Positions 32,835 through 53,400 of a DNA stretch of 64,000 nucleotides are shown here, piece by piece. Below the pieces are notes generated by a model. That model was given only the letters and a program-made list of their open reading frames with translations, made no database searches and was not told the DNA's origin. Within the stretch, counting starts at the first letter, position 1. Every line of letters begins with the position of its first letter. The DNA comes from Macrostomum lignano (taxonomy: Eukaryota): assembly GCA_002269645.1 (NCBI GenBank), contig NIVC01000648.1, positions 1-64,000 on the forward strand, given 5' to 3'. A program made the position numbers and the translations under genes.

Positions 32835-35627
32835 TTATCCAACAACAAACTGCTTATAATCTTTAATCCGCTTTAACTGACACCGGATCCCCTTCACCAA
32901 ATCCGTGGGCTGCAATACCAGACTGATCTCCTGGCCGTGAGCATTCAATCGCAGTGCCACCTCTTTCGGCTCCGGCCAGAGACTCAGCGGCCGGCCATTG
33001 ACCTCGGTAATAGTCCAGGTGCAAAAATTGGCGTCGTCAACAGCGCCAGTGGTTCGATAAGCCAAGCCGTGAGCAGCGGCCAGGCCGTCCTGCTGCACGT
33101 GACAGATCTCGGCCTTGTGGCCGACAGTCTGCAGGCCCAGCGACTGGCCGTCCAAGCGTTGGACGCTGAAGGCTTTGCCGTACGGCAGGCGGCGCAGGCG
33201 GAGGGCGACGCGGTCGAAGGCGCCGTGCAGAATCCGGCGGAGCTGATCCAGCGACTCGATTGGGAAGCCATCGACTGAGATCACCTGTGGCGGGGAGGGG
33301 CGGAGGTGGGCTAAGGTTTCAGGGAGGGTTTTGAGGGTTCAGTGACGGGTTTAGTGAGGGTTCAGTGACGGGTTTAGTGAGGGTTCAGGGACGGATTTAA
33401 TGAGGCTTCAGGGACGGATTTAATGAGGCTTCAGGGACGGATTTAATGAGGCTTCAGGGACGGATTTAATGAGGGTTCAGGGACGGTTTCAATGAGGTTC
33501 AGGGACGGATTTAAAGAGGGTATTTAATAACGATATATTAGCTTCGGCAAGAAGCGAACCTCATCTCCCACATGCAGACAGGAGTGCAGCCTGGTGGCCT
33601 GCCTGGTCCAGCCGGCAATCCAGAAGCGGTCGCTGGCGCACTGCACAATGGCCACATTGTCCAGCAGGTCGGCACTCTTGCACATAACTGCAACCCGCCA
33701 GGGTAAAGAATCTGGCGCTTCAATCGTTCAACAGCCGAGCTCAGCGGCGTCAGGCGGGGCCCGCCGGGCAGCGGGTTCACGTAGAACCGGCCATTGTCGG
33801 TCTCTTCAACCGCCACGTCGGTTTTCGGCTCGAAGAATCCGGCCAGAGGAATCGGCCGGAGCTCCCGACGGAACGTGGGCGGATCCGGGTTGGGCCGGTG
33901 CACCCCGGCGACCGAGCGGAACCGCTTGGTGCGCAGCGCGCCCAGGCCGTCCCAGTCTTCCAGTTCGCGGTACTTCTTCTCTAACAGGGCGTAGGCTGCG
34001 GGATCCAGACTGGCCAGCTCGCTGGGGCCCGCCAAGTTGGCGGCGGCGGCGGCCGGAGCGGCTTCGTTCAGCTCCTGGCGCAGCTGGGCCACCGCGGACC
34101 GGCCCTGAGCAGCTTCGATGCGCTGCTCAACTCGGCGCAGCTCGATCAGAATCTCGTTGGTTGCGCTGGAGGCGGCAGCAGCGTTGTTGCTGCCGTTGCC
34201 ATTAGCAACGGAACAGCAGGCGGCCGCGTCCTCCTCGGTCTCGTCGTCGGTGGTTTCGTACACCTCTGCGGCGGCGCTGTCATCAAAGGTGCCGTAGATG
34301 TTGTCGGGCTTCTGCCGGCCGGAGTATTGCGCCAGGTTGCGGTTCAGGACGTCCGACCAGTCGGCTGGGGGCGTGAATGAGATGAATGATAGGGTAGGGA
34401 GTTGGGCGTAAATGAGGTGGGTGATAGGGTAGGTAGTTGGGCGTGAATGAGGTGGGTGATAGGGTAGGTAGTTGGGCGTGAATGAGGTGGGTGATAGGGT
34501 AGGGAGTTGGGCGTGAATGAGGTGAATGCTAGGGTAGGGAGTTGGGCGTGAATGAGGTGAATGATAGGGTAGGGAGTTGGGCGTGAATGAGGTGGGTGAT
34601 AGGGTAGGGAGTTGGGCGTGAATGAGGTGGGTGATAGGGTAGGGATTTGGGCGTGAATGAGATGAATGATAGGGTAGGGAGTTGGGCGTGAATGAGATGA
34701 ATGATAGGGTAGGGATTTCGGCGTGAATGAGATGAATGATAGGGTAGGGATTTGGGCGTGAATGAGGGTGGGTGACAGGGTTGGTAAGTTGGGCGTGAAT
34801 GAAGGTAGGTGATAGGGTATGGAGTTGGGCGTGAATGAGATGGGTGATCGGGTATGGAGTTGGGCGTGAATGAGGTGGGTGATCGGGTAGGGAGTTGAGC
34901 GTGAATGAGGTGGGTGATAGGGTAGGGAGTTGGGCGTGAATGAGGTGGGTGATAGGGTAGGGAGTTGGGCGTGGATGAGGTGGGTGATAGGGTATGGAGT
35001 TGGGCGTGAACGAGGTGGGTGATCGGGTATGGAGTTGGGCGTGAATGAGGTGGGTGATAGGGTACAGTTGGGCGTGAATGAGGTGGGTGATAGGGTATGG
35101 AGTTGGGCGTGAATGAGGTGGGTGATCGGGTATGGAGTTGGGCGTGAATGAGGTGGGTGATAGGGTACAGTTGGGCGTGAATGAGGTGGGTGATAAATTT
35201 GGGATTGGTCGTGAATGAAGCTAGAATGAAACGGTGCAGTGAGAAGTGAACAAAAGTGAGCACAAGCAGCCAGAAGCTCACCAGCATCAGTCTCAGAGTC
35301 GGCAGTGAGTGTGAGCACCCGATCAGCCAGGGTGAGCATGAAGCTGGTCACATCGCTAGGAGATCGAATCACCTGGCGGCAGCCGCGCAAATCAAACGAA
35401 TTGATTGGCGCCTCAGTCCTGGCCGAGTTCGAGTCCTCGTAGTATTCGAGCGAGGGCAGGCCGCCGAATATGAGGAACACGAACCAGCGCCTGGTGGGTC
35501 TGTGCAGCAGTGAGATGGACTTCAAGCCGGAACCACCGCCTCCGCTGCTAGCGCCGTTTGCGCCGCCGTTGTAAGCCGAGGTCTGCTTCTTCAGGTAGCC
35601 AGCCTTGATGGTGATTTGCTGGTTCAT
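32835..35627 (-). CDS. PH domain + tandem PDZ-domain protein (exons 35627-35282, 34364-33560, 33284-32835), with an apparent 1-nt frameshift near 33690
   Basis: PH: IKAGYLKK...RRWFVFL...LEYYED...FDLRGC...SETDA|ADWSDVL. PDZ: LHVGDE|VISVDG, and LGL...EI..V...GLAA..GL...ITEVNGRPL. Exon 2 is 805 nt, one base short of phase consistency. Confidence 0.8.
33330..33520. repeat. ~23-bp intronic minisatellite
   Basis: Unit GGGACGGATTTAATGAGGCTTCA. Confidence 0.85.
34375..35195. repeat. 35-bp G-rich intronic minisatellite, about 23 copies
   Basis: Unit GGGTGATAGGGTAGGGAGTTGGGCGTGAATGAGGT in intron 1 of the PH-PDZ gene. Confidence 0.95.
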
Positions 35628-35777
35628 TGCTGCTCTTTGCTTGCAGAAGAGCACTTCCCTCTGGAGGGTGGACCAACTGCTGCAGTTGCTAGGGTTGGAA
35701 TGTATGGGCTACGGATTCCAGCTGTCAATTATATTCTGAAACCAATTGATTGGTGTTGGAAAAAGGGTGTTCAAACA

Positions 35778-36190: not shown

Positions 36191-36959
36191 AAAATTCAAA
36201 TGGGTCAATAATTCTAAGAAACGCAAAATTCTAAGAAAAGTCTTGAAAAAATCACGCTAAACGAATTACCATATAAACAAGAAAGCATAATTACTAACGT
36301 AATAGTACCTTTTTATGATGCGAAGTCAGAAGATTTTAACGGCGAATTCAGAAGAAAGGCGAAATCTTTTAAAAGTCTTGTCTGTTTTGATATTGGCCTA
36401 CTACGAGCCGTAATATCGTTCAATTAATAGCTGGATATATATATAAGCTTGAAGCAGAGAAAGCCAAAAGCCAACAGGAAATCTCTTGTCCCCTGTATTC
36501 TATTGCAATCTATTAAAGCTGGCTAAAACTAAAACTAAAACTAAAAGATAGAAGGAAGGCGCACAAGCTAGAAGCACTTATCAAGATAACGCAGGGCCTG
36601 CAGTGCTGTATTAGTCAGTTCAGCTAAAGTCAGATGCACAGGCGGGTTAGCGACAAGGGAGTGAGAGACAGAGTGGTTCAAAATCTTTCATACAGTGCAG
36701 ATTCGGTGTTTATGCTATGCTATACTAGGTCATGTATATAATTTATGCATCAGCCAATGCTGATGCAAGGGTGGGGTCTGCACACCAGAATAAATATTAC
36801 GTAGCAACAACCTCGCAAAATAGAGAATTTCACACACAGACTTTAAGGTAAGTGGGTAGATGCAAGCGAGGAAAGGGTTACAGATACGGGAGCGAGGCAG
36901 GGGTACGGGTGGGTTGGGGTGATTGGAGAGAAAGAGAGATCGAAAATCAGAGACAGACA

Positions 36960-37820
36960 GACAGAAATAGAAGAGTTAGAGAAAGGTAGAGTGGGAGAGG
37001 GAGGGGAGGGGAGGAGGGAGAGGGGAGTGGGGAGGGAGAGAGAGAGAGGGGAGTGGGAGGGAGAGGGGGAGTGGGGAGGGAAAGAGAGGGGAGTGGTAGG
37101 AGAGAGGGGAGTGGGAAGGAGAGAGAGGGGAGTTGAAGGGAGAGAGGGGAGTTGGAGGGTGAGAGGGGAGTGGGGAGCGAGAGAGAGGGGAGTGGGAGAG
37201 TGAGAAAGGGTGAGAGAGAGGGGAGTAGGAGAGTGAAGTAGGGGGAGAGAGGGGAGTGGAAGAGAGAGGGGAGTGGGAGGGAGAGAAGGGGGAGTGGGAG
37301 GGTGAGAGAGGGGAGTTGGAGGGAGAGAGGGAGTGGGAGGGTAAGAGATGCGAGTGGGAGAGGGGAGTTGGAGGGAGAGAGGGAGTGGGAGGGTAAGAGA
37401 TGCGAGTGGGAGAGAGAGGGGAGTTGGAGAGAGAGAGGGAGTGGGAGGGTAAGAGATGCGAGTGGGAGAGAGAGGGGAGTTGGAGGGAGAGAGGGAGTGG
37501 GAGGGTAAGAGATGCGAGTGGGAGAGAGAGGGGAGTTGGAGGGAGAGAGGGAGTGGGAGGGTAAGAGATGCGAGTGGGAGAGAGAGGGGAGTTGGAGGGA
37601 GAGAGGGAGTGGGAGGGTAAGAGATGCGAGTGGGAGAGAGAGGGGAGTTGGAGGGAGAGAGGGAGTGGGAGGGTAAGAGATGCGAGTGGGAGAGAGAGGG
37701 GAGTTGGAGGGAGAGAGGGAGTGGGAGGGTAAGAGATGCGAGTGGGAGAGAGAGGGGAGTTGGAGAGAGAGAGGGAGTGGGAGGGTAAGAGATGCGAGTG
37801 GGAGAGAGAGGGGAGTTGGA
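36960..37820. repeat. Polypurine (GA-rich) tract ending in a 56-bp minisatellite
   Basis: Unit GGGAGGGTAAGAGATGCGAGTGGGAGAGAGAGGGGAGTTGGAGGGAGAGAGGGAGT, about 8 copies from 37330. Confidence 0.9.
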
Positions 37821-38609
37821 AAGAGATATGCAGAGAGATTCAAGAAACAAACTTGCAGCCCAGACGCCGCTTTCAATTCCGAAATCGCATCTCAAGTGAG
37901 CAGTTTTCACACAACAACTCATTACAGGCCATATTTCAACAGGAGCTGCAGGGGTGGAGCTGTGTAATCAGCAATTCCCCTAGCAATGGCAGAGTTTCAG
38001 AAGCCAATTTGCACTCTTGAAGCAATAAAAGAAAGGCAAACCCTCTAGACACTAAAATAAACCAAACATAGGAAAAAATATAGAAGCAGAAAAACCACCA
38101 TTTGAGCATAGTAAAACCTTCAAAACAGTCCCGGTTTGAGTATATTTCTACCAACAAAGGTATACAACAACTTTTATGATCAATAAACTTCAGGACGGAT
38201 TTCTAATTGTTGAGATTCGCAAAAACACTTTATAAAAGTATAAATAAAGCTGGTAAAAAAACTCTGATAGAGAAATACTTCAATCTAGTTAGGAAGCAGT
38301 CCATAAGTTTTTTATTAAGAAATTTCACTTTAAGCTGGGAGAAAAAATACGACAAATCAACAAGTGTCAGAAAATAATAGAAATTTTCAAGGAATTTGTA
38401 AAAACGGACAGCGAAAATTTGCTGAGAATTAACAATAACAGTTATTTGGAGCAGAATGGAATATAAAGTGCACACAGCACTCCATCACGCCTAGCACCTA
38501 AAGTCACCTTGTTTTTTTACTTTGTAATTGGTTCAATTTGCGATTTTTTATTATTTTTACTTGGGGAAGAAAGGGGAGACTTAGAGACGAGATTAGGGGC
38601 ATAGGATAG

Positions 38610-38970
38610 GGTGAATAGAGAGGCAGTGAGCAGAGATAGAAGAGAGAGGAGAGAGGAGAGAGCGGAGATGTGAGAGAGAGAGAGAGAGGATAGAGGGGGA
38701 GAGAGCGGAGATGTGAGAGAGAGAGAGGATAGAGGGGGAGAGAGCGGAGATGTGAGAGAGAGAGAGAGGATAGAGGGGGAGAGAGCGGAGAGGTGAGAGA
38801 GAGAGAGAGGATAGAGGGGGAGAGAGCGGAGATGTGAGAGAGAGAGAGAGAGGATAGAAGGGGAGAGAGCGAAGATGGGGGAGGGAGGGTAGAGGTGGAG
38901 AGAGTGATGGGGGAGGGAGGGTAGAGGTGGAGAGAGTGATGGGGGAGGGAGGGTAGAGGGGGAGAGTGGA
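38610..38970. repeat. Second GA-rich tract with ~40-bp degenerate units
   Basis: Units like GAGAGCGGAGATGTGAGAGAGAGAGAGGATAGAGGGG. Confidence 0.85.
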
Positions 38971-39104: not shown

Positions 39105-42100
39105 TCAATCATCCCCTTCCTCTCCAGCCTCTTCCTCTTCATTGACTTCATCATTATTCTCTTCCTCGGCCTCAGCCTCTGCGTCATCAGCTGCTTGTGC
39201 ATCGCCAACCTCCTCGGCCACCGTAGTCAGCGGAGCCTCTTCGAGTCGTTGCAGGCGAGCGCGAAGCTGTTCAACATCCTCTAGACGGAGCAGCTGCTCT
39301 ACCAGGTCCGGCGTGAGCTTGAGCAGCGCCTCGGCTGACAGGGCTGGGAGTGACAGCGACTGCAGGCGGTCGCGAAGCTGCTCGACGCCTGGGTGAGAAT
39401 TGTTTAAATAGAGTGAACTGCTCAACTATCTGAAATAAGCTCCTGAGTGATCTGGAGTGAACTTCTAAGCGATCTAGAGTGAACTTCTAAGCGATCTAGA
39501 GTGAACTTCTAAGCGATCTAGAGTGAACTTCCAAGCGATCTAGAGTGAACTTCTAAGCGATCTATAGTGAACTTCTAAGCGATCTAGAGTAAACTTTTAA
39601 GCGATCTAGAGTGAACTTCTAAGCGATCTAGAGTGAACTTCTAAGCGATCTAGAATGAACTTCTAAGCGATCTAGAATGAACTTCTAAGCGATCTAGAAT
39701 GAACTTCTAAGCGATCTAGAATTAACTTCTAAGCAATCTAGAGTGAACTTCTAAGTGATCTGGAGTGAACTTCTAAGCGATCTAGAATGAACTTCTAAGC
39801 GATCTAGAGTGAACTTCTAACCGATCTATAATAAACTTCTAAGCGATCTAGAGTGAAATTCTAAGCAATCTAGAGTGAAATTCTAAGCGATCTAGAGTGA
39901 ACTTCTAAGCGATCTAGAGTGAACTTCTAAGCAATCTAGAGTGAACTTCTAAGTGATCTGGAGTGAACTTCTAAGCGATCTAGAATGAACTTCTAAGCGA
40001 TCTAGAGTGAGGTTCTAACCGATCTAGAATGAACTTCTAAGCGATCTAGAGTGAACTTCTAAGCAATCTAGAGTGAAATTGTAAGCGATCTAGAGTGAAC
40101 TCTAAGCGATCTAGAATGAACTTCTAACCGATCTAGAATGAACTTTTAAGCGATCTAGAATGAACTTCTAAGCGATCTAGAATGAACTTCTAAGCGATCT
40201 AGAGTGAACTTCTAAGCGATCTAGAGTTAACTTTTAAGCGATCTAGAATGAACTTCTAAGCGATCTAGAATGAACTTCTAACCGATCTACAAAATGAACT
40301 TCTTAAACTACTTTCAAGATGCGCAGAATAAAGTTATCTATTCAGTATCCAGTGTATCTCAATTGCACTTCTACAACCATAGACAACCATATAAAAGTGC
40401 ATTCTGTGTAACATCACCCCAGAAACTCACTAGCCATGTCAACCGGAGTCTGCGACGGAACTTTCTGACCGTCGTCCAAGGCGATCTCGAGGTCGCCGCC
40501 GATGTCGACGCTCTCCTCGACGACGGGCTCCGGCGTGGGCGGCTTTGGTGGAGGGAACACCAGCAGGTAGTCGCGCTGGGCGGCCTGGATTGCGGGGTCG
40601 ATGATTGTCTGGCTACACAATTTTACTACTGAATACGTACGGGTCATGGCATTTAATTATTTACACTACTTTAATTAGACAAGGTGAGTTCTTCGACTCG
40701 ACTCAGTCAGTGCGACCACAGAGAATTTTCAAAATAATAGCAGAGCAATATTTTAAGGTTTATGTGCAATTACTGTTGCATAATAAATGGCGAAAAGTTT
40801 ACTTAATTTCACTAGGATATTGGAAAGACCGACTGACGCCAAAATGGGTGTCATTACTAAAAGGCTGTCCAGTGTGAAATCCGAAAGTTTGTGTTTCTCT
40901 GCTTTGATGTACCTTTTAAGCCGTGTTTAATATTTAAACTTTTGCGATTTGCGCGTTAATTCCATTTTTTCTGGCTCGTAACCTCTATAATTTTCTAAAA
41001 GGCTTTATCTGCCGAGCCGCTAGTAATACAATTTTGGGAGTAACTCTATGTACTGCACACACACACACTTACACGTGTATACAGTAAATAACCTGCTGAT
41101 GATAAAATAAAATTCACCGTCACAATAATTGTCATTTTTAGACGTTCAACAATAGACCCCGACAAAGGCCTTTATGCGGCCGAAATATTCGTGGTATCGA
41201 AAGCTTGACCTTCCCACTTCTTCAATTTTCCGAATGCGCGGTTATAGCTGGAAATGTCTAACTGCTTGTTCATATCTGTCTATTTATATATCTATCTATT
41301 AGCACCATTGACACGATCGAAAACATGATGGACAGCAGCACAAGAGCCTGCATTCCCAGAGTTATTCCTTGTACGGACAGGTATACAAATATTGTATACG
41401 AACTTCGCACGGTTCTCTCAAACCATGCACAAGGGTTGGACACTTGCTGCGTACACTCGATCACGCTCTCTAAAGGAAATTTACTGTCCTTTAAAGCTGT
41501 CTGCCCTCACTGATGGCATTGATAAATCCAATGTGCGACGGGGCTCACCACAAATTTATAAATAAACTCACAATATATTTTAGTCCCTACTTGCAGTATG
41601 TTTTCATTTTTTGCTTTTCATTTTCGTGTTTTCGCGTATTTTTCGTCTTGGCTGTGTAACTTACGATTAGAGCTGCTACTGAGTGAGTCGTCTTTTTATT
41701 CCTCTTCCTACCCCGTGGACCAGTCAGCTTGTTTTTTTCTTCGGTTGCCCGAGAATTTCGAGGCACAACCGCACTTGGCACAACTCCGAAAGAGAATTTT
41801 CTGAGCAATATAATCAGCAACGTCAAAACACTCATACCGGAGCACATCAGCATCGTTCGCGGCCAAACCACAGACTTCCAGACGCTGATCTACGAGCGTA
41901 CCAACAATGGGACTGGTCTTGGAACAACCGCCGTAACAACGATGTACCGCACCGTACTCGGGATAAGACTAGTCGTGAAAATGTTAAACCTCGCCGCAAC
42001 CGCAACAAACCTCGCAGGATTAAGAATCGCAACGTCGAGACGTGATTCTCGACGAAATAAAGATAGCCCTTATGCTCCTGTTACTAAGGCTCTACCGACT

Positions 42101-45100
42101 AGTGCAGCCTAAAGTCTCACCCAGTCAAGAAACTCTTAAGGTCTGTCCATCACTTGGACAACTGGCGTATGTGCCGAAAAGCGTTCACAAGAAAGCCGAG
42201 CAGAAAGAAACGCTCATCCGAACAGCTATGCCGACCGATGGACCATCAACGCGTTAAAGAAAACGCGGCGACCTGGAAAAGCAGAAAGCAAGATTCAATG
42301 GAGAGCCACTACGAGCTTTGCATGCTAAAAACTGCGTACGAGCTACAGTACGAGCTACATATGAAAGAGCCAATCCCATGTCGGACGTTAAGGCTGTGAT
42401 CCTGTTACCATGGGACCAGGCTCTTCTAAGGCAATTTGAAGAGCTTATCGACAAGCAGCTGACCACAACTATCAACCACTGTGGCAAAAGCCTTTCCAAA
42501 ATCGAAGGTCTACACGATAGATCAAATTAGTTGCTGCCGATGCACCTGACAAATATCTGTGAGCAGCGGAAAACAGATACCGGTACAGCAAAGCAGATAA
42601 TTTTTTTTTGGGCTGCTGTGTCACTTTAAACAACGAAGACAAGAGGAAGAGATTACCCTAATCGATCTACTTCAAAGCGCACGGATTCCCAACAATGATT
42701 GAACCCAAATTCATTTTATCCAAAGCAGACATTCAAAGGTATGAAATCTCTGTTTCTTCGCTACTCCATCTTTGAAGATGACTTTGATCAGGCCAGCAAC
42801 AACCTAAATGTGCATTCTAAAAAAAGCAGGGTCATTCAATCCCTTCGATCGACATTTTTTTCTGTGGAATTTCGGCTTCCAAGACTGCGGTAGCCGAGAC
42901 TGTGAGTTATGCGAGACTGTGAAAAAGGCGGAGCAATCAAGGTCAGACTCCAGCCTCACTTGAGCGATATCAGGCTCGCTAAGGACAACCGTGTTAGCAG
43001 GAATTTTTGCTCTTCCAATCACTGCTTTGGTAATTTACGCATCATGGGCCTCTGGTACCTCAGCATCGAGAATGAGACCAGCAAAGAAGCCTATCGCAAA
43101 CGCAGGATCGTGGAACAGAAAATCATCTCCCGCTGAGCACGCAGTCATCATGCACAAGGGTTGCACACTGTATCTGCGTTCACTCGATTACACTTTTGAG
43201 AACATTTTCTGCCCCTGAAAAATTCCTGCCCTCACTGATGGCATTGATTAAGCTTTTCAGAGTGGGCGGCAATGCAGCAATACTGTGCGACGGGGCCCAC
43301 CACAACTTAACACAAAATATCTAGTCCCCAACTACAGTATATTTCAGTAGATTTTCGCTTGATTTTGTTACACATGCAGAGAACCCCGACTAAGGCCAGC
43401 TCATTGCCGAAATATCGGTTCAGTACATTTATATTTTTCGTCTGTAACAGTCTTTGTGATTTTTCTCGTTTAAGTTAAGCTTAGAGCTGCTATACTGTTT
43501 GGGTGGTCTTATCTATCTATCTATCTACCATTTTTACTCAACGACGCTGTTCAGCGCACCCTTTTAAAGCTGGTATATAAATATTAAGGTTATGATAAAG
43601 TAGCTTCACTGCCAATATAATTGTTGTTTTTATACCCTTAAAATAAACCATAATGAGCATGAGCACTAATATCTACTACTACTAAGAATACTACTACTAC
43701 TTTTCTACTATTAGTCTACTACTGAACGGCAGTGCCCAGTTGCCTGTGACCAGGGGCTGGACGGACGGCGGTCTGTGACCAGACACCGCTAACTGCGACT
43801 CGTGGCCTGACTCAATTTAATTACTGTTATGCATTTACATCTAATTATTTACACTTCTTTATGAAGTCAAAGTTCTCAGTGCTCTATATCAATTTAATAT
43901 CAGTGTTTTTGAAATACCTTCTTGTTGGGATATACTTTTCAAGCTGCTTAGTCATTCATTTCTTTGATTTAAACCTGTTTTTCTATAGCTCCTCACATCT
44001 ATATTTATTGTGCAAGGCTTTAGCGCCCCAACCAACCAGAGTGCTTCAATTTACTCTTTTCATTTACTTTCTGTACAAATTTTTACTCAAAAATGCTCAG
44101 CGCTCCCCTTCAAAGCTGGTATATACATAATTTTATGGTAAATAATTTCACTGCCAATATTTGTTGTTTTTAGACCCTAAAAATAAACCTTTAAGAAGGC
44201 TAGGATCTGACCGAAATAGATCGGCTTAATCAATCATCTTTATCAAAAAAGTATTCCTACTCTGCGTGCGTGGTTTTGCTTTGACATTCGTCTATCTATC
44301 TATATATCTATCTCTATCAATCTACCGGTAGGTTATGCCTACCAATAGCCGCACCTGGCATAACTCTAAAAAACTAGCAAACAAATCCAAAAAGTGACCG
44401 ACGCCAGCAAGACCGTAACCAGCCGGGTGGCCTTGGCAACAGATCCCGAAATGAATAATCTACTGGTTACGCTCGGGGCATAAACTGGCATGGGCCTAAT
44501 CGTGAATATCGCCGCACTACAGACCATAGAACTCGTGATCACGATCATCTTGAGCCTCGCCGTTACACCCGTCATGATCCACGTGATGACAACCGCCGTG
44601 GTTCCCGCAGCGACGGTTGCCGGCCTCCCCGAGGCCCTCGCGCCGACACCCGTCAAGAAGCTCACCAGGGGACTCCCGAGGTCAACAGAAGCCGCACGAG
44701 TTGCCCGCCTTGTTAAGCAACTCTTCCGAGCGGCGCAGCACTTGGAGAACTGGCGAGTTGTCCCGAGTGGGGTGCACCGCAAAACCGAACAGCTGAAAAA
44801 CTTTATTCGGCCGGCCCTTAATACCGAAGCGACGCAACAATGCGTGCATGACAAGCCTTGACATGGGAGCTGAGCACCCAGGATACAATGGAGAACCCTT
44901 ATGAGCTATGCCTTTTACCGCTTGTCAGCCGAAATCGAGGATGCCAGCAAGGAGGTCGACACGAGTCAGCTGCAAACGAGCTGGCGTGTTGGGTTCCGCT
45001 GGACATCGCAAGACGGATGCGATCAGGCATCCCCACCTGCAGGCAGCAATGGTGCTCTCAATGAACATCTATCTACTGCTGAGCCGCACACGTCCACCAT

Positions 45101-48100
45101 CACTATCGACGACTCACAATCGCAGGGTAGAGTCACCAGCACTGGACAGTATTGGCCTTGAGGACAGTGTTCACTTAACAGCAGCCTCCGACCAAGAGTC
45201 CATCCTGCAGGACCGACCCGCCTGTGCCCAGGAACCCAAAGTAGGCGCGGACTGTCCTCAGTCACCACAGGCTAGCGCGCACCCCTCCAAAGCTCGTATA
45301 TAAATATTAAAGTTATGATAAAATAAGTTCACTGCCAAAATAATCGAAATAATCAAAATAATTTGGGCTTTATACCCAAAATGAATCCTAAAGAAGGCCA
45401 GGTTCAGGCCGAAATATCGGTCGATTTAAATAAGTTCGATTTGACTTATCATTAAGAGAATTCGACTCTGAGTGCGTGGCTTTACTTTGGCATTCGGTTA
45501 TATCTTCTCCCGCGACCAGTGCTTGGTTTTCTCTCGGTGTGCCGTCTACTCACCCCGCTAAAAATCAACTCATGACCAAAATGAGCACAAGCGCTAATAT
45601 TTACAGCTGATACTACTAGACGTTCGAGCCTACTATGACTACGATTACGACGTTGAAGACTACTACTACTATACTCTACTACTACTACTACCACTACTGT
45701 TACTACTACTATTAATCTGCAATCGATCGGCAGTGCCCAGGGGCTGTGCAGGCGGCGGTCTGTGACCAGACGCCGACAACTGCGACTCATGGCCTGACTG
45801 GCTACTTCAAATAACCTCTACTAGTACGACTCTACTATCACTACGACTAGGACTACTACTACTACTGCAACTAATACAGATGATCGGCAGTGCCCAGTCG
45901 CTTGTGTCCAGGGGCTGTGCAGGCGGCGGTCTGTGACCAGACGCCGCCAACTGCGACTCGTGGCCTGACTGGCTTCTCGTTCTCAATTACTGTTGATGTA
46001 TTTGCATTTAATTATTTACAATACTTTAAGCAATCCAAGTTCTCAGTGCTCTTTATCAATTTAAGTTGTGTTTTCGTAATAAATTTTGTCGTACTAGTCA
46101 AGATGCTTAGTCATTCACTTTTTTCTAAATCAGTTTTTCTGTAGCTTCTCACATTTATTTTTGTTATTATCCAAGGCTTTAAAGCTGCAACCAATCAGCC
46201 TGCTTCAATTCATCCTTTTTATTTTAAGTACACATTTTAATCAACGCTGCTCAGCTCACCCCTCTAAAGCTCGTATATAAATATTAAAGTTATGATAAAA
46301 TAAGTTTACTGGCAAAATAATCGTTGTTCTTATACCCCAAAAATAAAGCCTGAAGAAGGCCAGGATCTGGCCGAAATATCGGTCGATTTAAATACGTTCG
46401 ATTTGACTAATCATTAAACCACTACAAGACTGGCTTTGCCTGCTCGCATACCCGTTCCCGACGGCTTGGTCCGAAGTCGGGCCATAGACAAATTAGACTA
46501 ATTTTCTTAGTCTAACTTTCACAGCCGTAGACGTCGGGAGCTGTTAAAGTCAAATGCATTCCATAGAGTTCTAGCATAGAGTTTCCAAGATCCATTCAAA
46601 CTAATCGTTTATCAACAAAACCGGAGTCAGCTGATTCGTCTAGCTATTACTCAACTGCTGACGAGGCCGTTGATGAGTTTGAAGATGAGGTAGAGAACCC
46701 AGGAGTCGAACACGTTGGTGAGTGGCACATGGTTCAAGCTGACACTGATAATCGACCATCAGCCTTGCCTTAATTCCTCGGTACCCCCGGTGCACGACCT
46801 GATTGGCATTCTCCACATGCTGCGGATGGAAACGAAGAAGCTTTCCTGAAGCTATTTCTGACGGATCAACTGTTTGAAGATACTAGCCGATGGACCAACG
46901 CAAAAGCTTGGAAGATCTTTCAGGAGGCAGAGACTCGGGATGCTGTACCGAAGCTGGTGTTAAACTGGCGTGATTGCTCCACTAATGAAGCTCGAAAGTT
47001 GGTGGGCATTGTGCTTGCTGCTCATGGGAGTCGACAAGAAGCCAGAAATAGCCAGCTACTGGTCAACCGACCTGATCTTTCACTGCCCGTTTCTTTCCAA
47101 GCCTTTCTCTCTATCAAGAGACCGATTTAAGCAGCTCCTGTCGTGTCTCCGTTTCTACGACTGCTCCGAGGCTTTAGGTGCTGGTCCATTGGCAAAGATG
47201 GAGCCCTTTCTCGATCGTGTGAGGCAACTCTGCAGCAATAACTACATGCCCCGACAGCGACTTTCAATTGATGAGACGCTGGTGCTTTACAAAGGGAGAG
47301 TTGCTTTCAAGCAATATATCCCGTCGAAGCGAAACAAGTATGGTATAAAGCTGTACTGCCTCTGCGAGACTGAGAGTTCATATTTATGGAACTTCGTCAT
47401 ACACACGTCTCCTGAGGTTAATCAACAGTTTGGTGAAGGACTCGGATGTCAAGGCTTGAGTATGAGCGAGAGTTGTGGCAGAGCTGTGCCGCGGTCTCCT
47501 CTATCTCGGACATCATGTGTTCACTGATAGTTGGTTTACATCACGCCGGCTCGCCGATTGGTTGCTGCAACACGATACGCTGCTGACCGGGACGGTGCGG
47601 AAGGATCGCGGCATTCCCGCTGATTTGCAGGCTGTCAACATCCACCCAACTTCATCTGCATTCGCACGTTCAGGTGACCTCTTAGCGTGTAAATTTGTCG
47701 ACAGGAAGCAAAGCGGCACCAAGACCCTGTATTTGCTGGACACGGCGGGCAAGGCAGAATGCATTCAGGTTCAACGCAACCGTCGCGGTGGTGCAATGCA
47801 GGTGGTGCAAAAGCCTGCTAGCGTGCTTGCCTATTCTTCCAGTATGGGCGGGATTGACCATTTGGACGCCTCAATGCATCCGTATCTCGCAAACCGAAAG
47901 AGCATGCGCTGGTTCCACAAGCTGGGATTTCATCTTCTTGCGATGCTTGTGCGGAACTCGTGGGTGATCTACCGACAGTCAGGTGGCACAAAGACCTTTC
48001 TGCAGTTTCTGAGGCTGGTAATAAAGAGTCTTGTGGAGGACACTGGGGTTGCCAGGAGACGTGGACCTACACCAGGTGGTGCTGGCGCTCTTGCTATTGG

Positions 48101-50383
48101 CGGAGGAGATGGTGCTGACGCCCATTCACCAAGCAAGGCTCCAAGATTCGGAGACCAGGTCCGACCACGCAAAAGATGTCGTGTGTGCTATGCAGCTGGC
48201 CAGGTCAAGAAGACTATATTCGTTTGCGAAGCCTGCCCGGGAGTTCCAGCCCTTTTCCTAGGTGCCTGTTTTTCACACTGGCACTCGCACTAACTATTAG
48301 CTATTAGCTTTATTACCTTTAAACCATTAGATGAATCAAAACCGTTATTACGTAATCGGATTTTTGTTGATGTTAATGTTCGTTATTCACTGAATTGTTA
48401 TGCGTTGCATTATTCGTGTGATTTTTTTCGGCTCTATTGCAGCCTAATGCAAGTGCATGTACCACAGTTCTGAGTCTCCTATTCAGGCACAATCCCTTAA
48501 CTGGCCGTTCCCTTTCATCACCTGCCCACATGTACCAAACCACCTACCTAACTACCTACCTACCTACTCATTGTACCATCCTGCTTACTCGTATCTTACA
48601 GATGCTCCAGTGTTTACATCTGTTCCTACTTGGAAATTGTCCCTTATAAGTAATGTAATTAGACTATTCCGGCTTTATTGGGAACAAGCTTACTTCGTAC
48701 AAGCAATTTTTACAGTTTTGTTGAAAACCTCTACAGTAGTTTTATTATAAAGGAGTTATAAATATTACAGGTATGACATATATAATCTAATAATTCTCTT
48801 TTTTTCGTCATCTACTATTTGCAACCTTCTTAGACACTGACCCGAAATCGGGCCATTCCCGTCGGGAACGGGTGTGCTGAGATGATGATTGATTTGCCAT
48901 AGAATTTTACAAACGCGCAGCCGTTCGCTTCGGTGCTGGCGGGATGACCCGAAATCGGGCCATCCACCCGCTCATGGTTAAGAGAATCCGACTCTGAGTG
49001 CGTGGCTTTACTTCAGGTGTCCCAAATTTATTTAGATTACTGCTGCTATTTGAAGAGTGAACTATAGCTACAGCTGTCAGCGCACCACATGCTACCATAG
49101 ACAGTACCGAAGACGCACAAGAGATTTAAGTATCACTGCACCCTCTCTTGCGCATCACTAATAGATTTTTATAGCTCAGTTTTGCCTACTGCAACGCCAG
49201 TGCAAAAACGAATGGAGCCTAGCAAAGAAAACTTTAGATTTTACGCATGGACGCGGCAGCAGCTTGGAATCAGTGCTCAACAGTGCTTTGAAGAGTTGTC
49301 TTCCGTATATGGCAGTGGAGCTCCATGCCGTGCAACTGTATTTAATTATTTCAAGGCAGCCACCGCTGATGCCAAGACCGGCCCCACTAAAGGAGCAGGC
49401 GACTGCCCGAGTGCCAGCGGTGCCGGGAGACCTCGATCAACTCGAACACCAGAGATGATCAGCGATGCGCGTGTTCTTCGATCCAAAAGTGTCAGTACGG
49501 ACCCTTGCTGACTGGCTGGAGGTTGACAAGTCAACGGTGCATCGAATTTTGAGAGAAGACCTGGAGCTGCGTTGTGTCACATCGGTATGGGTGCGGCGGG
49601 TGCCCCATCACCTCGCCAAGGCCAACAAACAGGCTAGGGTGGCATGTGCCAGAAACATCCGCAGCGTGTTTCAGAGTGAAGGAATCAACATCATAGATAA
49701 GTTGGTCACCCAAGATGAGTCCTGGATCTGCCCTGCAAAATGAGCAACAGATGCTGGCTGTCGAAGGGGGAGCCCAGGTGGTGAGAAGATGCATGACAAA
49801 CAAGAAGACTCTGCTTGTTGCAGCCTTCACCCCCAGCAAAAGGTTTTCATTTGAAACAACCAAACCAGGACAGTCAGTGGATGCGGAGTTCATTGTCAAC
49901 TTCGTTCAGCGAACCGGAAATCTCTGGCGATCTTTAAGAAGTCAACCGATTCATCTTGATCAGGTGATCTGGCAGTGGGACAACGCCCGGCCTCACACAG
50001 CTGCAGCAACTCAACATTTCATGGAGAAACGAGGCATCTGATTGCTGCACCAGGCACCGCACAGTCCAGATTTTAATCTTTGTGACCGTTTTTTGTTTTC
50101 TTGGCTGAAGCGAGACTTCGAGCATCGCCAGTTTGGGAACCATGTTGAAGTGCAACAGGCGACGTTGCAGTGGGCAAGGGGTCTGGAGATTGAGAGCCTG
50201 CAGCAGGAGTTGCATCGACTTTGGGATCACTGCGACGCTGTTATTCAATGCCAAGGAGATTACGTCACTGACTGATGGTTTGTTTTGTTGCTGCAGTTGA
50301 TATTGTTAAATTTAGCGAGAAGTCTAAATAAATTTGGGACACCCGAAGTACTTTGAAATTCGGCTATCTATCTATCTATCCAT

Positions 50384-50442
<59 letters not shown>

Positions 50443-53400
50443 CCTACCTACCTATCTATCTACCTACCTATCTATCTACCTACCTACCTATCTATCTACC
50501 TACCTATCTATCTACCTACCTATCTATCTACCTACCTATCTACCTACCTATCTATCTACCTATATATCTATCTATCTACCTACCTATCTATCTACCTACC
50601 TATCTACCTACCTATCTATCTATCTATTCTGCACCTCACCTCAGCCAGCTGAGCCAGTCGCTGGACGGATTCCTCGGACAAGTCGACATCTTCGACAACG
50701 GACCAGGCGCCTTTCGGCTGGAATCGGACGGGAAAGCTGAACACCCGACCGGGCGGGATGCCGTACCAGCCTGCGAGATTTCGGTAAGAGGGGTCGGGTT
50801 GTGTGTTTAGACACAGGTCAGATCGCTGGCTTAGTAGTTGACTAAGTTAAGTTGAGTTGGCCGCGATTAGTACGTTGCAGTCAATAGGCTCAGACAGTCT
50901 CACCCTCGGACACAACTCCTAACGAGTAGATCTCGTTGCCAGAGCCGCCCAGCCACCAGTTGCGTACCGTGTCAGCTGTGGCCTGAGCAGTGCTCAGCGC
51001 AGCCGATCGTGGCCCAGTTCCGCCTAGCAACAGATTGTTATCCTGTCGCTGACGCATTGTTTTAGGAAACTCCTGATTGAGCCATTTCTTATCCCAAACT
51101 GTGTCCAGCACAGGCTGGTTGTAGCTGTCCGGTCCCGTGATTGACCCGTCGTAGTAGTGCACCCGGGCCCGGCTCAGGTCCACCAGGTTCTCCCCGGCCG
51201 GGTCGCCCCAAACTATCAGGTCAACCACGCTGGACGGCAGCACCTGGATAGGGTAACAAGCGATGGAGACTAAATGTATAGGTCACTCAGTTCATCGGAC
51301 AGTAGGTCACTCAGTTTATCGGACAGTAGGTCACTCAGTTTATCGGACAGTAGGTCACTCAGTTTATCGGACAGTAGGTCACTCAGTTTATCGGACAGTA
51401 GGTCACTCAGTTTATCGGACAGTAGGTCACTCAGTTCATCGGACAGTAGGTCACTCAGTTTATCGGACAGTAGGTCACTCAGTTTATCGGACAGTAGGTC
51501 ACTCAGTTTATCGGACAGTAGGTCACTCAGTTTATCGGACAGTAGGTCACTCAGTTTATCGGACAGTAGGTCACTCAGTTTATCGGACAGTAGGTCACTC
51601 AGTTTATCGGACAGTAAGTCACTCCGTTCATCAGACAGAAAATAGATCACTCCATTAATCAGAATCAAAAGGAAATTCTCCGTGCAGTTTTTGAGACTGT
51701 AGGCCCCCCTTTAATAATTAGAACAAAGGGCATTCATCCTAAAAGCCCAAAATCTACACTGACCTTCATATGTCCCGCCAGTGCGCCCTTGGCCTGCCGC
51801 TCCAGCAACCGACCGGCAGCGGCCACATTTCTGGCCGGCAAGCGCGGACAGGCGTCCAGCAGCACCCGGGCGCCGAAGTTGACAGGCCCGCGGCCGGCAA
51901 GCAGCACCTTCAGCCGGCGACTGCATTCGGCCGCGTTCAACCAGTCGGCGTAGCGTCGATAAACTGCAGCGGCGGCCGACAGCCAGTCGACACGGGCGGC
52001 CAGCTCGGCGGCCGAGGCGGCTGCATCGGCGTCCGATTTGTCCGGCTTCGTTGGCGAGTCGCCTTCGGCCGGTGAAGCCTCCGTCGCCGTCGCCGCCTTT
52101 TTGTCTTCCTCGCCGTCCGTTGCCGACTCCTGCGGCGACGGCGGCTTCAAGAGGACGTCGTCAAGCAGCAGCAGGATGTCTGCGGCGGCTGCGGCCTCCT
52201 GGAAGTTGGCGGTGGCCCGGATGCTGCGCACCAGCGGATGGGCCAAGTCGAAGGCCTCCATCACCAGGCCCTGATGAAGGGTTCGGGAGCAGCAATGCGT
52301 AACATAATTATCTTGCAAATAATTAGACAGCATTTTCAAGGCATAAACTGAGGATCTGGGAGGCAAGCCCAGCAACTGAGGATCTGGGAGGGTGGCCCAG
52401 CAACTGAGGATCTGGCAGGCTGGCCCAGCAACTGAGGATCTGGGAGGCTGGCCCAGCAACTGAGGATCTGGCAGGCTGGCCCAGCAACTGAGGATCTGGG
52501 AGGCTGGCCCAGCAACTGAGGATCTGGCAGGCTGGCCCAGCAACTGAGGATCTGGGAGGCTGGCCCAGCAACTGAGGATCTGGGAGGATGACGGTGACCC
52601 AGCCAGTAGGTAAACAGACAGGCGCACGGACCTCCAGCTCCTCCGCATCAGCTACATCGCAGTCGAACAGTGTGAAAGCCAGCTCAGTGCTCCGTCCGAA
52701 CACGGAGCCGTCCATGAGCAGCGGCAGCAGCTGGTAGGCGGTGGGGCTCGCCGAGGCCGTCACTAGCACCTGCAGTGGCCTAGATAGCGAGCGCAGGTGA
52801 GCCTCTTCGGCGTCCAGCTCCGATTTGTAGCGCGAGTTGTCCTTGGCAACCGCGAGCATCTCCGGGCTCAACATCGATGATTCGGCATCGTAGTAGGCTG
52901 CGAATTGGCGCATGCGCAGGGAAGGGGGCAGTAGATGAAGGTGAAATGGAGTAGTAGACAGGTGAAATGAGGTAGTAGACAGGTGAAATGAGGTAGTAGA
53001 CAGGTGAAATGAGGTAGTAGACAGGTGAAATAGGGATAGTAGACACAGGTGAAAAAGGGTTAGTTGACACAGATGAAACAGGGGTAGTAGACACAGATGA
53101 AACAGGGGTAGTAGACACAGATGAAACAGGGGTAGTAGACACAGATGAAACAGGGGTAGTAGACACAGGTGAAACAGGGGTAGTAGACACAGATGAAACA
53201 GGGGTAGTAGACACAGATGAAACAGGGGTAGTAGACACAGATGAAACAGGGGTAGTAGACACAGGTGAAACAGGGGTAGTAGACACAGGTGAAGCAGGGG
53301 TAGTAGACACGGATGAAACAGGTTAGTAAACTATTTAACACCAAGGCAGTTTCCGCTCACCCTTAGCAAACTCTTGAAACTCATTAGCGCCGCCAATTAG

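What the first reader, a model, noticed from the sequence alone, without database searches (positions are those of the whole stretch)
41158..46390. Five hammerhead-ribozyme motifs in a Penelope/retrozyme tandem inside a host intron
Seen: GGCC-N7-GGCC-GAAAT cassettes at ~41158, 43385, 44189, 45387 and 46350. The last has an intact CTGAAGA core, a 6-bp stem II and a GUC site; the fourth has a fully paired stem I but a G-to-A core change; the others are more decayed. Known: Penelope-like elements and their non-autonomous retrozymes carry minimal type I hammerheads with very short stem III that can cleave as dimers. Inference: a head-to-tail array of 0.5-1.9-kb units, antisense to MDH1B, that could produce self-cleaved or circular RNAs; units 4 and 5 might complement each other.
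Basis: partly seen in the sequence, partly recalled or inferred. Interest (0 to 1): 0.78.

Follow-up and report, generated by a model that had tools for sequence, protein, structure and literature searches.

The report
Decayed hammerhead relics in retroelement cluster
A cluster of old, broken copies of a Penelope-type mobile element sits inside an intron of the MDH1B gene, and each copy carries the remains of a small self-cutting RNA motif, an ordinary finding in animal genomes that is unlikely to be active today.

Summary
The five cassettes are real and homologous. Only three match GGCC-N7-GGCC-GAAAT exactly (41167, 45396, 46358). Only the last (c5, 46350-46384) keeps the hammerhead core CUGANGA...GAAA with a 6-bp helix II.

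c5 shows the published hallmarks of Penelope-like "minimal" hammerheads: an extra base after A9, a G10.1-C11.1 pair, a long helix II and a UA palindrome at 15.2/16.2. A match this good appeared in 0 of 300 random windows.

Against current activity:
- No Rfam hammerhead model detects c5.
- Its helix I is broken.
- Its predicted fold is a competing hairpin.
- The five copies show no significant covariation.
- The cleavage site is ambiguous (AUC 46378-80 or GUC 46382-84).

Each cassette lies in a pseudo-LTR module: TATA-like box, hammerhead, then (CTAT)n. These modules join six head-to-tail units. Two units carry a decayed orphan ORF, two are non-coding, and none has RT or endonuclease. The array extends to 50627 and is interrupted by a piggyBac and a mariner. 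It lies antisense in an MDH1B intron.

Verdict: these are fossil copies of RT-less, Penelope-derived (retrozyme-like) elements with hammerhead relics. This is a new member of a known kind, of low interest.

The parts
41159..41195 (+). Cassette c1. Decayed hammerhead motif: core CCGACAA (U4C, G8A), extra A, GGCC-N7-GGCC (4 bp), GAAA-UA-UU.
43381..43421 (+). Cassette c2. Core CCGACTA (U4C, G8U) and a broken helix II (GGCC...TGCC). Helix I is an intact 5 bp, GAACC/GGUUC, under the GAAA-UA-UC| (AUC) reading.
44190..44230 (+). Cassette c3. Core TTTAAGA (C3U, G5U), helix II GGCT...GACC with one mismatch and one wobble, and a 2-nt insertion (GAAA-UAGA-UC).
45379..45428 (+). Cassette c4. Core CTAAAGA (G5A, which inactivates), helix II 4 bp. 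Helix I is 6 bp under the GUC reading and 3 bp under the AUC reading.
46341..46390 (+). Cassette c5. Intact core CUGAAGA (46350-56), extra A (46357), helix II GGCCAG-GAU-CUGGCC (46358-72), GAAA (46373-76). Candidate cleavage is after C46380 (AUC, minimal reading) or after C46384 (GUC). Helix I is broken at position 2.2 (G). A competing hairpin GGCCGA/UCGGUC spans 46369-46384.
46235..46417 (+). Alpha-type pseudo-LTR module of unit E, first part. It holds a TATA-like box TATATAAATATT (46274-46285) about 65-75 nt upstream of c5. Homologous modules lie at 41043-41302 (c1), 43530-43650 (cX, hammerhead part missing), 44079-44326 (c3) and 45263-45510 (c4).
41303..43530 (+). Unit B. It comprises a 5' beta-type pLTR copy (about 41400-41700, lacking the ~55-nt hammerhead cassette), a decayed orphan ORF (about 41730-43130), and a 3' beta-type pLTR (43140-43530) with c2 and a (CTAT)n tract.
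44327..45277 (+). Unit D body. A decayed orphan ORF homologous to the unit B ORF. Mismatches between the two concentrate at third codon positions (p=2e-4). It has no Pfam domain and no homologue in the protein collections.
43650..44079 (+). Unit C body. Non-coding, 76% identical to the unit E body, with an (ACT)n tract.
45510..46235 (+). Unit E body. Non-coding, with an (ACT)n tract and an internal ~140-bp duplication (45666-45806 and 45832-45977). It is flanked by the c4 and c5 pLTRs.
46418..48977 (+). Nested piggyBac-type DNA transposon with frameshifts, flanked by TTAA (46414-17 and 48978-81). It interrupts the c5 pLTR 30 nt after the motif.
49011..50348 (+). Nested mariner-type DNA transposon with stop codons. 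It has 33-nt terminal inverted repeats and a TA duplication, and it also interrupts the c5 pLTR.
50349..50627 (+). End of the c5 pLTR plus a (CTAT)n microsatellite (50364-50627). Equivalent (CTAT)n tracts follow every cassette by about 90 nt, at 41280-41302, 43510-43530, 44279-44326, with a remnant near 45499.
50641..50795 (-). Host MDH1B exon (...[14 protein letters not shown]...LAQLAE) ending in a GT donor. The intron that holds the array starts here and runs towards lower coordinates.
50893..51243 (-). Host MDH1B exon region carrying the Ldh_1_C domain.

Best explanation
The interval is part of a roughly 9.6-kb pile-up (41043-50627) of six head-to-tail copies of RT-less retroelements. The copies are long dead. 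They sit on the + strand inside an intron of MDH1B, antisense to the gene.

Every copy ends in the same pseudo-LTR module. The module has a TATA-like box, then about 65-75 nt later a minimal type I hammerhead of the kind described in Penelope-like elements, then about 90 nt, then a (CTAT)n tract at the junction with the next unit.

Inferred life cycle of the once-active family:
- Transcription started in a pLTR and ran through the tandem.
- The minimal hammerheads may have cut the multimeric RNA, pairing as dimers through the AUAU segment or helped by protein.
- A Penelope-type RT/endonuclease supplied in trans copied the RNA back into the microsatellite or into earlier copies. This would produce the 5'-truncated partial tandems seen here.

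Present state of the copies:
- Four of the five motifs have core mutations that inactivate the ribozyme.
- The fifth (c5) keeps the core and helix II but has lost helix I pairing.
- c5 is predicted to fold into a competing hairpin.

Self-cleavage or circular RNA from this locus is therefore unlikely.

Shown here: the sequence anatomy, the homology between units, the absence of RT/EN, the nested transposons and the host gene. Inferred: promoter use, ancestral cleavage, mobilisation in trans.
For: Hallmarks of the motif:
- c5 and the consensus of the copies carry every hallmark listed for PLE minimal hammerheads in PMC4209133: CUGANGA, an extra base between A9 and G10.1 (A in 5 of 5), G10.1-C11.1 (5 of 5), helix II of 6 bp, GAAA, and a UA palindrome at 15.2/16.2.
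- A match of this quality occurred in 0 of 300 random windows.

Independent support from other genomes:
- The pattern CTGANGANGGCC-N5-9-GGCCGAAATATC retrieved 20 metagenome loci.
- Most of them have a compensating 4-6 bp helix I of differing sequence.
- One (L007) lies about 100 nt downstream of a GIY-YIG endonuclease ORF with the GVYRIPCGDCAQCYIGET motif.

Architecture:
- There are direct pLTR repeats around bodies.
- The units are head-to-tail and differ in their 5' extent.
- A (CTAT)n tract lies at every junction.
- This matches the PLE traits in PMC8557442: 5' truncation, partial tandems, hammerheads near 3' ends, and a microsatellite bias.

Decay:
- Core mutations are present in c1-c4.
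- Copies are 76-95% identical to each other.
- The ORFs are frameshifted.
- The nested piggyBac and mariner have clean TTAA and TA duplications, and joining their flanks restores the pLTR.

Folding:
- The hammerhead-compatible fold of c5 scores -3.5 or -8.4 kcal/mol against an MFE of -16.8.
- The metagenome yardsticks keep helices I and II in their MFE folds.
Against: - No reverse transcriptase or GIY-YIG domain lies anywhere in 41000-46420. The Penelope link therefore rests on the motif type and the architecture only.
- No Rfam hammerhead model scores the cassettes, even in a 101-nt search.
- The five copies show no significant covariation under either reading.
- c1 and c2 share a non-consensus core (CCGAC, U4C). 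An inactive version may have been propagated.
- The upstream pLTR of unit B and the cX module lack the cassette altogether. The cassette was therefore not needed for those copies to be made.
- No other copies of the family could be retrieved, because the genome is not in the accessible collections.
Confidence: 0.7

Rival explanations
1. One reading: c5 is still a working hammerhead, alone or paired with c4. The c4-c5 unit (about 960 nt) is released as self-cleaved or circular RNA antisense to MDH1B, as in an active retrozyme.
For: - The c5 core, helix II and GAAA are intact.
- Under the GUC reading, helix I has 5 of 6 pairs and helix III has 2 bp.
- The c4 and c5 pLTRs are 95.5% identical downstream of the motif, so they may be the two ends of one insertion.
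- A TATA-like box is conserved upstream.
- PLE hammerheads are known to need dimers or protein (PMC4209133, PMC11167929).
Against: - c4 has G5A in the core, so at most one of the two sites needed to release a unit could be cut.
- c5 has a G.A or G.G mismatch at position 1.2/2.2, next to the core.
- Its hammerhead-compatible fold is 8-13 kcal/mol above the MFE, which sequesters the 3' strand of helix II and the cleavage site.
- A dimeric helix III would be only AUAU/AUAU, formed between sites 962 nt apart.
- Rfam finds nothing.
- A piggyBac sits 30 nt downstream of c5.
- Even intact PLE minimal hammerheads cleave poorly in vitro.
Confidence: 0.1
2. The hammerhead resemblance is coincidental or vestigial at the level of the whole family. 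On this view, the conserved feature is a pair of overlapping hairpins (GGCC...GGCC and CCGA-AAUA-UCGG) in the 3' region of a non-Penelope retroposon, for example a LINE-dependent element with a (CTAT)n tail. These hairpins would serve as a recognition site for a reverse transcriptase, not as a ribozyme.
For: - There is no RT/EN to tie the array to PLEs.
- There is no Rfam hit and no covariation.
- The CCGA...UCGG hairpin is kept in all five copies and dominates the predicted folds.
- c1 and c2 share a non-consensus core.
- Every unit ends in a microsatellite, as many LINE and SINE families do.
- A LINE-type RT fragment is present elsewhere in the window (6384-7053).
Against: - The inferred ancestral core is CUGANGA. 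G5 is supported by c1, c2 and c5; G8 by c3-c5; U4 by c3-c5.
- The extra base after A9, the G10.1-C11.1 pair and the UA palindrome are specific, independently published PLE hammerhead traits.
- The chance expectation is 0 in 300 windows.
- The same motif class sits next to a PLE endonuclease ORF in L007.
- pLTR-body-pLTR units are typical of PLEs, not of LINEs or SINEs.
- No tRNA-like head is present.
Confidence: 0.12
3. The units with ORFs (B and D) are internally deleted autonomous Penelope elements. Their orphan ORF would be the poorly conserved N-terminal nucleic-acid-binding or coiled-coil part of the PLE polyprotein. The array would then be an ordinary degraded PLE tandem rather than a distinct non-autonomous family.
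For: - The ORF starts just after the hammerhead and (CTAT)n, which is where PLE ORFs start relative to the hammerhead (PMC11167929).
- It has arginine-rich and helical stretches.
- It carries a coding signature.
- PLE N-termini are weakly conserved, which would explain the failed searches.
Against: - No similarity to any protein was found in three word-indexed searches and one exhaustive HMMER search.
- There is no trace of RT or EN even as fragments.
- Two independent units would both have had to lose the same 2-kb part.
Confidence: 0.3

Closest known systems
Minimal type I hammerheads of Penelope-like elements (Cervera & De la Pena 2014, PMC4209133; dimeric small variants)
   Same: - CUGANGA core with an unpaired base between A9 and G10.1.
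- G10.1-C11.1 pair.
- Long helix II (6 bp) and short helix I.
- No real helix III, with a palindromic UA at 15.2/16.2.
- Located in a direct repeat (pLTR) near the 3' end of the unit.
- Many decayed single copies.
   Different: - No RT/GIY-YIG ORF is associated within the window.
- Only one of the five copies keeps the core, and that copy lacks a paired helix I.
- A built-in competing hairpin (GGCCGA/UCGGUC) dominates the predicted fold.
Penelope-like elements (Penelope/Poseidon, Neptune and related clades; PMC8557442, PMC11167929)
   Same: - Head-to-tail partial tandems forming pseudo-LTRs.
- Variable 5' extent of the copies.
- Hammerhead near the pLTR-ORF junction.
- Association with a microsatellite.
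- A promoter-like element in the pLTR.
   Different: - The units are 0.8-2.2 kb, against about 3-4 kb for full PLEs.
- They encode either nothing or an orphan ORF, with no telomerase-like RT and no GIY-YIG endonuclease.
Metazoan non-LTR retrozymes (PMC7229834; bioRxiv 10.64898/2026.07.22.740005)
   Same: - Non-autonomous and hammerhead-bearing.
- Head-to-tail arrangement.
- Proposed to derive from PLE pLTRs and to depend on PLEs.
- The two non-coding units have hammerhead-to-hammerhead spacings of 804 and 962 nt, inside the 51-972 bp range given in the 2026 preprint.
   Different: - Classical retrozymes are homogeneous 150-450 bp tandem repeats.
- They carry canonical type I hammerheads with loop 1-loop 2 contacts.
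- They are expressed as circular RNAs.
- Here the units are heterogeneous, interleaved with ORF-bearing units, the hammerheads are of the minimal type and mutated, and no expression data exist.

Membership tests
Hammerhead ribozyme (type I) | Conserved core C3-U4-G5-A6-N7-G8-A9 ... G12-A13-A14, an A15.1-U16.1 pair, and H17 at the cleavage site | tested here: met
   Met by c5 only (CUGAAGA...GAAA...UC). c1-c4 each carry 1-2 core substitutions: U4C+G8A, U4C+G8U, C3U+G5U, and G5A.
Hammerhead ribozyme (type I) | Three helices around the core (I, II, III) | tested here: inconclusive
   - Helix II is 6 bp in c5.
- Helix I in c5 is 1 bp, then a mismatch, then 4 bp (GUC reading), or 1+1 bp (AUC reading).
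- Helix I is 6 bp in c4 and 5 bp in c2, but under different readings.
- Helix III is absent or 2 bp.

Hammerhead ribozyme (type I) | Recognised by the curated covariance models (Rfam Hammerhead_1 and related families) | tested here: not met
   No hit at gathering score, at E<=10 on 7.5 kb, or on 101 nt around c5. Minimal PLE variants are not modelled in Rfam, so this is only weak evidence against.
Hammerhead ribozyme (type I) | Compensatory base changes in the helices among copies | tested here: inconclusive
   With five copies, the covariation score was reached by 152-195 of 500 shuffles, and 73-75% of cells were paired. There are too few copies to decide.
Hammerhead ribozyme (type I) | Site-specific self-cleavage giving 2',3'-cyclic phosphate and 5'-OH ends | not testable with these tools
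   This needs transcription assays or RNA end mapping.
PLE minimal hammerhead (Cervera & De la Pena 2014) | Unpaired nucleotide between A9 and G10.1, plus a G10.1-C11.1 pair | tested here: met
   An A is present at this position and G-C at 10.1/11.1 in all five cassettes.
PLE minimal hammerhead (Cervera & De la Pena 2014) | Long helix II (6-8 bp) and short helix I (4-5 bp) | tested here: inconclusive
   Helix II is 6 bp in c5 and 4 bp in c1 and c4. Helix I is 5 bp in c2, 3 bp in c4 and 1 bp in c5 under the AUC reading.
PLE minimal hammerhead (Cervera & De la Pena 2014) | Palindromic 15.2-16.2 (or loop 3) that allows a dimeric helix III | tested here: met
   GAAA-UA-UC or GAAA-UA-UU is present in c1, c2, c4 and c5 (AUAU is self-complementary). 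c3 has a 2-nt insertion. This holds only under the AUC reading; under the GUC reading the segment AUAUCGGU is not palindromic.
PLE minimal hammerhead (Cervera & De la Pena 2014) | Located in the pLTR of an element that encodes RT and GIY-YIG endonuclease | tested here: not met
   pLTR-like repeats are present. No RT or EN domain was found in the array: unit B was scanned in all three + frames, unit D in two of three, the rest of 41000-46420 in one + frame, and all three - frames across the interval.
Penelope-like element | Single ORF with a telomerase-like RT and (in EN+ clades) a GIY-YIG endonuclease | tested here: not met
   Pfam scans of the translated array found nothing. The ORFs of units B and D have no homologues.
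Penelope-like element | Partial tandem or pseudo-LTR organisation, with 5'-truncated copies and a microsatellite association | tested here: met
   Six head-to-tail units share a 3' module and differ in their 5' extent, with (CTAT)n at each junction.
Metazoan non-LTR retrozyme | Homogeneous short tandem repeats (about 150-450 bp), each carrying a canonical type I hammerhead with loop-loop contacts | tested here: not met
   The spacings are 2227, 804, 1198 and 962 nt. The units are of different composition, the hammerheads are of the minimal type, and Tandem Repeats Finder reports no array with such a period.
Metazoan non-LTR retrozyme | Expression as self-cleaved, circularised RNA | not testable with these tools

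The most novel reading that the evidence does not exclude
The array represents an undescribed non-autonomous, Penelope-derived family with these properties:
- Its members carry their own orphan protein gene, with no RT or EN, between hammerhead-bearing pLTRs.
- The minimal hammerhead has a built-in competing hairpin that acts as a conformational switch.
- c5 retains enough activity, as a dimer or with protein help, to process an intronic antisense transcript of MDH1B.
Probability: 0.06. Interest if true: 0.5.

Novelty: new member of a known kind. Interest (0 to 1): 0.2.

Why it matters
[quoted passage not shown] Another decayed cluster therefore adds little.

Three minor points are worth keeping:
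- It is a clean example in which the hammerhead cassette is present in some pLTR copies and precisely absent from others. This fits published doubts that the ribozyme is needed for transposition.
- An orphan ORF with a coding signature travels with this pLTR.
- It gives an annotation warning. The locus looks like a ribozyme array but is best treated as transposon fossils inside an MDH1B intron.

Tried and rejected
- **Rfam searches.** I ran the whole window at gathering score, 7.5 kb at E<=10, and 101 nt around c5. No hammerhead was found.
- **Strict descriptor.** Requiring a contiguous helix I of at least 4 bp gave 0 hits. c5 appears only when helix I is relaxed.
- **More copies in the window.** An nhmmer profile of the pLTR found none beyond the known six plus the 48974-49014 continuation.
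- **Identifying the ORF of units B and D.** Pfam found nothing, two word-indexed protein searches found nothing, and an exhaustive HMMER search of 1.84 billion representatives found nothing.
- **Reaching the source genome.** The piggyBac ORF is not on record. The MDH1B exon has no hit in the protein collection. The organism stays unknown, and no genome-wide copies could be collected.
- **Covariation.** Counts on the five cassettes under both cleavage-site readings are not distinguishable from shuffles.
- **SINE idea.** A tRNA-derived SINE is rejected because no tRNA-like sequence is present.
- **Last MDH1B exon.** The candidate at 40607-40417(-) could not be confirmed by similarity.
- **Self-correction.** My first view was that (CTAT)n is simply a 3' tail of independent insertions. 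I revised this after finding a degenerate copy of the tract inside the 5' pLTR of unit B. I now describe it as the junction element between tandem units.

Full report
**Observation**

Their cores start at 41159, 43386, 44190, 45388 and 46350, and they align with one another together with about 110 nt upstream and 90 nt downstream (A1; A4).

- The literal motif GGCC-N7-GGCC-GAAAT occurs three times (41167, 45396, 46358) against none in 100 shuffles.
- The second cassette reads GGCC-N7-TGCC. The third reads GGCT-N7-GACC.
- The cores read CCGACAA (c1), CCGACTA (c2), TTTAAGA (c3), CTAAAGA (c4) and CTGAAGA (c5).
- Only c5 therefore keeps the hammerhead consensus CUGANGA. It is followed by an extra A, a 6-bp helix II (GGCCAG-GAU-CUGGCC) and GAAA.
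- Cassette spacing is 2227, 804, 1198 and 962 nt.

**Is c5 more than chance?**

I wrote a descriptor requiring the core, an optional one-base bulge, helix II of at least 4 bp, and GAAA.

- It hits only c5 in both strands of the 64 kb.
- First-order Markov windows give 0.1 hits each.
- With helix II of at least 6 bp plus GAAA-NN-UH, 0 of 300 windows had a hit.

Several results point the other way.

- Rfam's hammerhead models do not see any cassette at gathering score, at E<=10 on 7.5 kb, or on 101 nt around c5.
- A descriptor that demands a contiguous helix I of at least 4 bp finds nothing.

**Comparison with the literature**

Cervera and De la Pena (PMC4209133) define the minimal hammerheads of Penelope-like elements (PLEs) by these traits:

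- an unpaired base between A9 and G10.1
- a conserved G10.1-C11.1 pair
- a long helix II (6-8 bp)
- a short helix I (4-5 bp, or 2 bp in D. virilis)
- no helix III, or a tiny one, with a palindromic 15.2-16.2 so that two copies can pair
- poor cleavage in vitro

How the cassettes compare:

- All five have the extra A and the G-C pair.
- c5 has the 6-bp helix II.
- Four of the five read GAAA-UA-U(C/U), where AUAU is self-complementary.

The two readings compete:

| Cassette | Helix I, AUC reading | Helix I, GUC reading |
|---|---|---|
| c2 | 5 bp (GAACC/GGUUC) | 0 |
| c3 | 2+3 bp | not applicable |
| c4 | 3 bp | 6 bp |
| c5 | 1+1 bp | 1+4 bp |

c4 and c5 carry a 15-nt duplication (TCGATTTAAATAAGT | TCGATTTGAC) just after the motif. 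This duplication may have created the GUC-reading helix secondarily. That is inference from the sequence.

Pair counts on the five copies show no significant covariation for either reading. Five copies are too few to decide.

**Independent yardstick**

Scanning JGI metagenome contigs with CTGANGANGGCC-N5-9-GGCCGAAATATC returned 20 loci. This pattern fixes the core, the outer helix II and GAAAUAUC, and leaves helix I free.

- Three loci (L009, L010, L017) are canonical hammerheads with a long helix III.
- Most of the others lie on ORF-poor, eukaryote-like contigs. They read GAAA-UAUC-UA| or GAAA-CAUG-UC|, followed by a 4-6 bp helix I whose sequence differs from locus to locus. They are therefore genuine hammerheads.
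- L007 has two inverted minimal motifs (GAAA-UA-UC|GC). One lies about 100 nt downstream of an ORF ending in a GIY-YIG endonuclease with the PLE-typical GVYRIPCGDCAQCYIGET motif.

The motif class is therefore real and PLE-associated elsewhere.

In these yardsticks the minimum-free-energy fold keeps helices I and II. c5 behaves differently:

- Its hammerhead-compatible fold scores -3.5 (GUC) or -8.4 (AUC) kcal/mol.
- Its MFE fold scores -16.8 kcal/mol. In that fold the 3' strand of helix II pairs with the cleavage-site region (GGCCGA-AAUA-UCGGUC).

**Architecture**

Self-comparison and alignments resolve six head-to-tail units on the + strand.

| Unit | Coordinates | Content |
|---|---|---|
| A | 41043-41302 | Only a 3' module, with c1 |
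| B | 41303-43530 | 5' beta-type pLTR copy, about 1.4-kb decayed ORF, 3' beta pLTR with c2 |
| C | 43530-44326 | Half pLTR without the hammerhead (cX), non-coding body, pLTR with c3 |
| D | 44327-45510 | About 0.95-kb decayed ORF, pLTR with c4 |
| E | 45510-50627 | Non-coding body 76% identical to that of C, pLTR with c5 |

- Each pLTR holds a well conserved TATA-like box (TATATAAATATT at 46274-85 and 45297-308) about 65-75 nt upstream of the motif.
- Each pLTR ends about 90 nt after the motif in (CTAT)n (41280, 43510, 44279, a remnant near 45499, and 50364-50627).
- In the upstream pLTR copy of unit B, the ~55 nt that contain the whole cassette, including both helix I strands, are missing.
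- In cX the module stops exactly where the core would start.

- A piggyBac (46418-48977) carries DDE_Tnp_1_7 and zf-Tnp_2 and is flanked by a TTAA duplication.
- A mariner (49011-50348) carries HTH_48 and DDE_3. It has 33-nt inverted repeats and a TA duplication.
- Joining the flanks of both elements gives a sequence 95.5% identical over 67 ungapped nt to the c4 pLTR.

**Coding content**

- No RT, GIY-YIG or any other Pfam domain was found in 41000-46420. Unit B was scanned in all three + frames, unit D in two of three, the rest of the interval in one + frame, and the whole interval in all three - frames.
- The bodies of B and D are homologous.
- Their mismatches fall preferentially on third codon positions: 31 of 51, against 18 and 11 of 51 (p=2e-4).
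- The phase switches where D has a 1-nt deletion.
- A real protein gene therefore once existed here.
- It matches nothing in three word-indexed searches or in an exhaustive HMMER search of 1.84 billion representatives.
- It may be the poorly conserved N-terminal part of a PLE protein, or a family-specific gene. I cannot tell which.

**Host gene**

- Minus-strand exons at 51243-50893 and 50795-50641 best match 'Putative malate dehydrogenase 1B' (9fqr_Xq, E=4e-28). Cytoplasmic MDH1 scores 3.5e-15.
- The second exon ends in a GT donor 9-14 nt from the (CTAT)n tract.
- The match ends at residue 447 of 522. At least one more coding exon must therefore lie at lower coordinates, and the array is most likely intronic.
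- An in-phase candidate exon at 40607-40417(-) could not be confirmed by similarity.

**Mechanism and verdict**

The best-supported reading is a fossil pile of RT-less, Penelope-derived elements. They resemble retrozymes in being non-autonomous and hammerhead-bearing, but they are not the homogeneous short tandem repeats that define animal retrozymes (PMC7229834). The 2026 preprint that derives retrozymes from PLE pLTRs makes the two labels overlap.

In the living family, the pLTR promoter, read-through of tandems, hammerhead processing and trans-mobilisation by a PLE enzyme are all inferred, not shown.

Two things fit published evidence that the ribozyme is dispensable for PLE insertion (PMC11167929; PMC8557442). 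One is the precise absence of the cassette from two modules. The other is the shared non-consensus core of c1 and c2.

Today four motifs are dead by core mutation. c5 has an intact core but no sound helix I and an unfavourable fold. Pairing c4 with c5 could at best cut one site, because in a double hammerhead each core cuts the partner's site and the c4 core is G5A. A unit-length or circular RNA is therefore not expected.

I put about 0.7 on this explanation and 0.1 on residual activity of c5. I put about 0.12 on the motif being a non-ribozyme structural element of a non-Penelope retroposon.

**Novelty**

This is a new member of a known kind, and interest is low. The organism could not be identified and no genome-wide copies could be reached. 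It is listed as the decisive next step.

Noticed in passing
window 46418-48977: A degraded piggyBac-type transposon (DDE_Tnp_1_7 plus a C-terminal zinc finger, with frameshifts) is inserted at a TTAA 30 nt after cassette c5. Subterminal 19-nt inverted repeats lie at 46446-46464 and 48859-48877.
   Followed up: yes
window 49011-50348: A degraded mariner-type transposon (HTH_48 plus DDE_3, 33-nt terminal inverted repeats, TA duplication) is inserted in the same pLTR. Joining the flanks restores the pLTR sequence.
   Followed up: yes
window 41730-43130 and 44330-45277: Two homologous decayed ORFs show an excess of third-codon-position substitutions but have no detectable relative in any protein collection searched. 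This is an orphan gene carried by the hammerhead-bearing elements.
   Followed up: partly
window 41590-41640 versus 43370-43430; window 43640-43660: The hammerhead cassette is precisely absent, helix I strand to helix I strand, from the upstream pLTR copy of unit B. The cX module breaks off exactly at core position C3. The cause is unknown; it could be deletion over a folded RNA during reverse transcription, or later acquisition of the cassette.
   Followed up: partly
window 41159-41165 and 43386-43392: c1 and c2 share the non-consensus core start CCGAC (U4 to C), although their flanking pLTRs belong to different subfamilies. Either an inactive core was propagated or the changes arose in parallel.
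   Followed up: no
window 50364-50627: A 264-bp (CTAT)n/(CTAC)n microsatellite begins only 9-14 nt inside the intron from the putative GT donor of the MDH1B exon at 50795-50641(-).
   Followed up: partly
window 39449-40289; 51279-51638; 38615-38966: Three repeat arrays flank the transposon pile inside or near MDH1B introns: a 22-bp minisatellite (38 copies, 91% matches), a 24-bp minisatellite (15 copies, 97%), and AG-rich 41/82-bp and 32-bp arrays.
   Followed up: no
window 52300-53310 and 60713-61692 (minus-strand ORFs): The same minisatellite is present at two places about 8 kb apart. In one frame it reads [28 protein letters not shown]. Other long repeat-generated ORFs lie at 2740-3903, 26540-27883, 34344-35654 and 36843-37922.
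   Followed up: no
window 6384-7556 (minus strand): A fragmented LINE-type reverse transcriptase (RVT_1, YADD motif). It is unrelated to the hammerhead elements.
   Followed up: partly
window 57972-58391 (minus strand): An exon-like ORF with a HAD-hydrolase domain, resembling phosphoserine phosphatase. This is a neighbouring host gene.
   Followed up: partly
L007 (metagenome contig Ga0182011_10240342), 561-660 and the opposite strand: Two inverted minimal hammerheads (GAAA-UA-UC/UU) flank the end of a GIY-YIG endonuclease ORF, an example of a Penelope-like element end. L002 and L016 also carry two motifs on opposite strands.
   Followed up: partly
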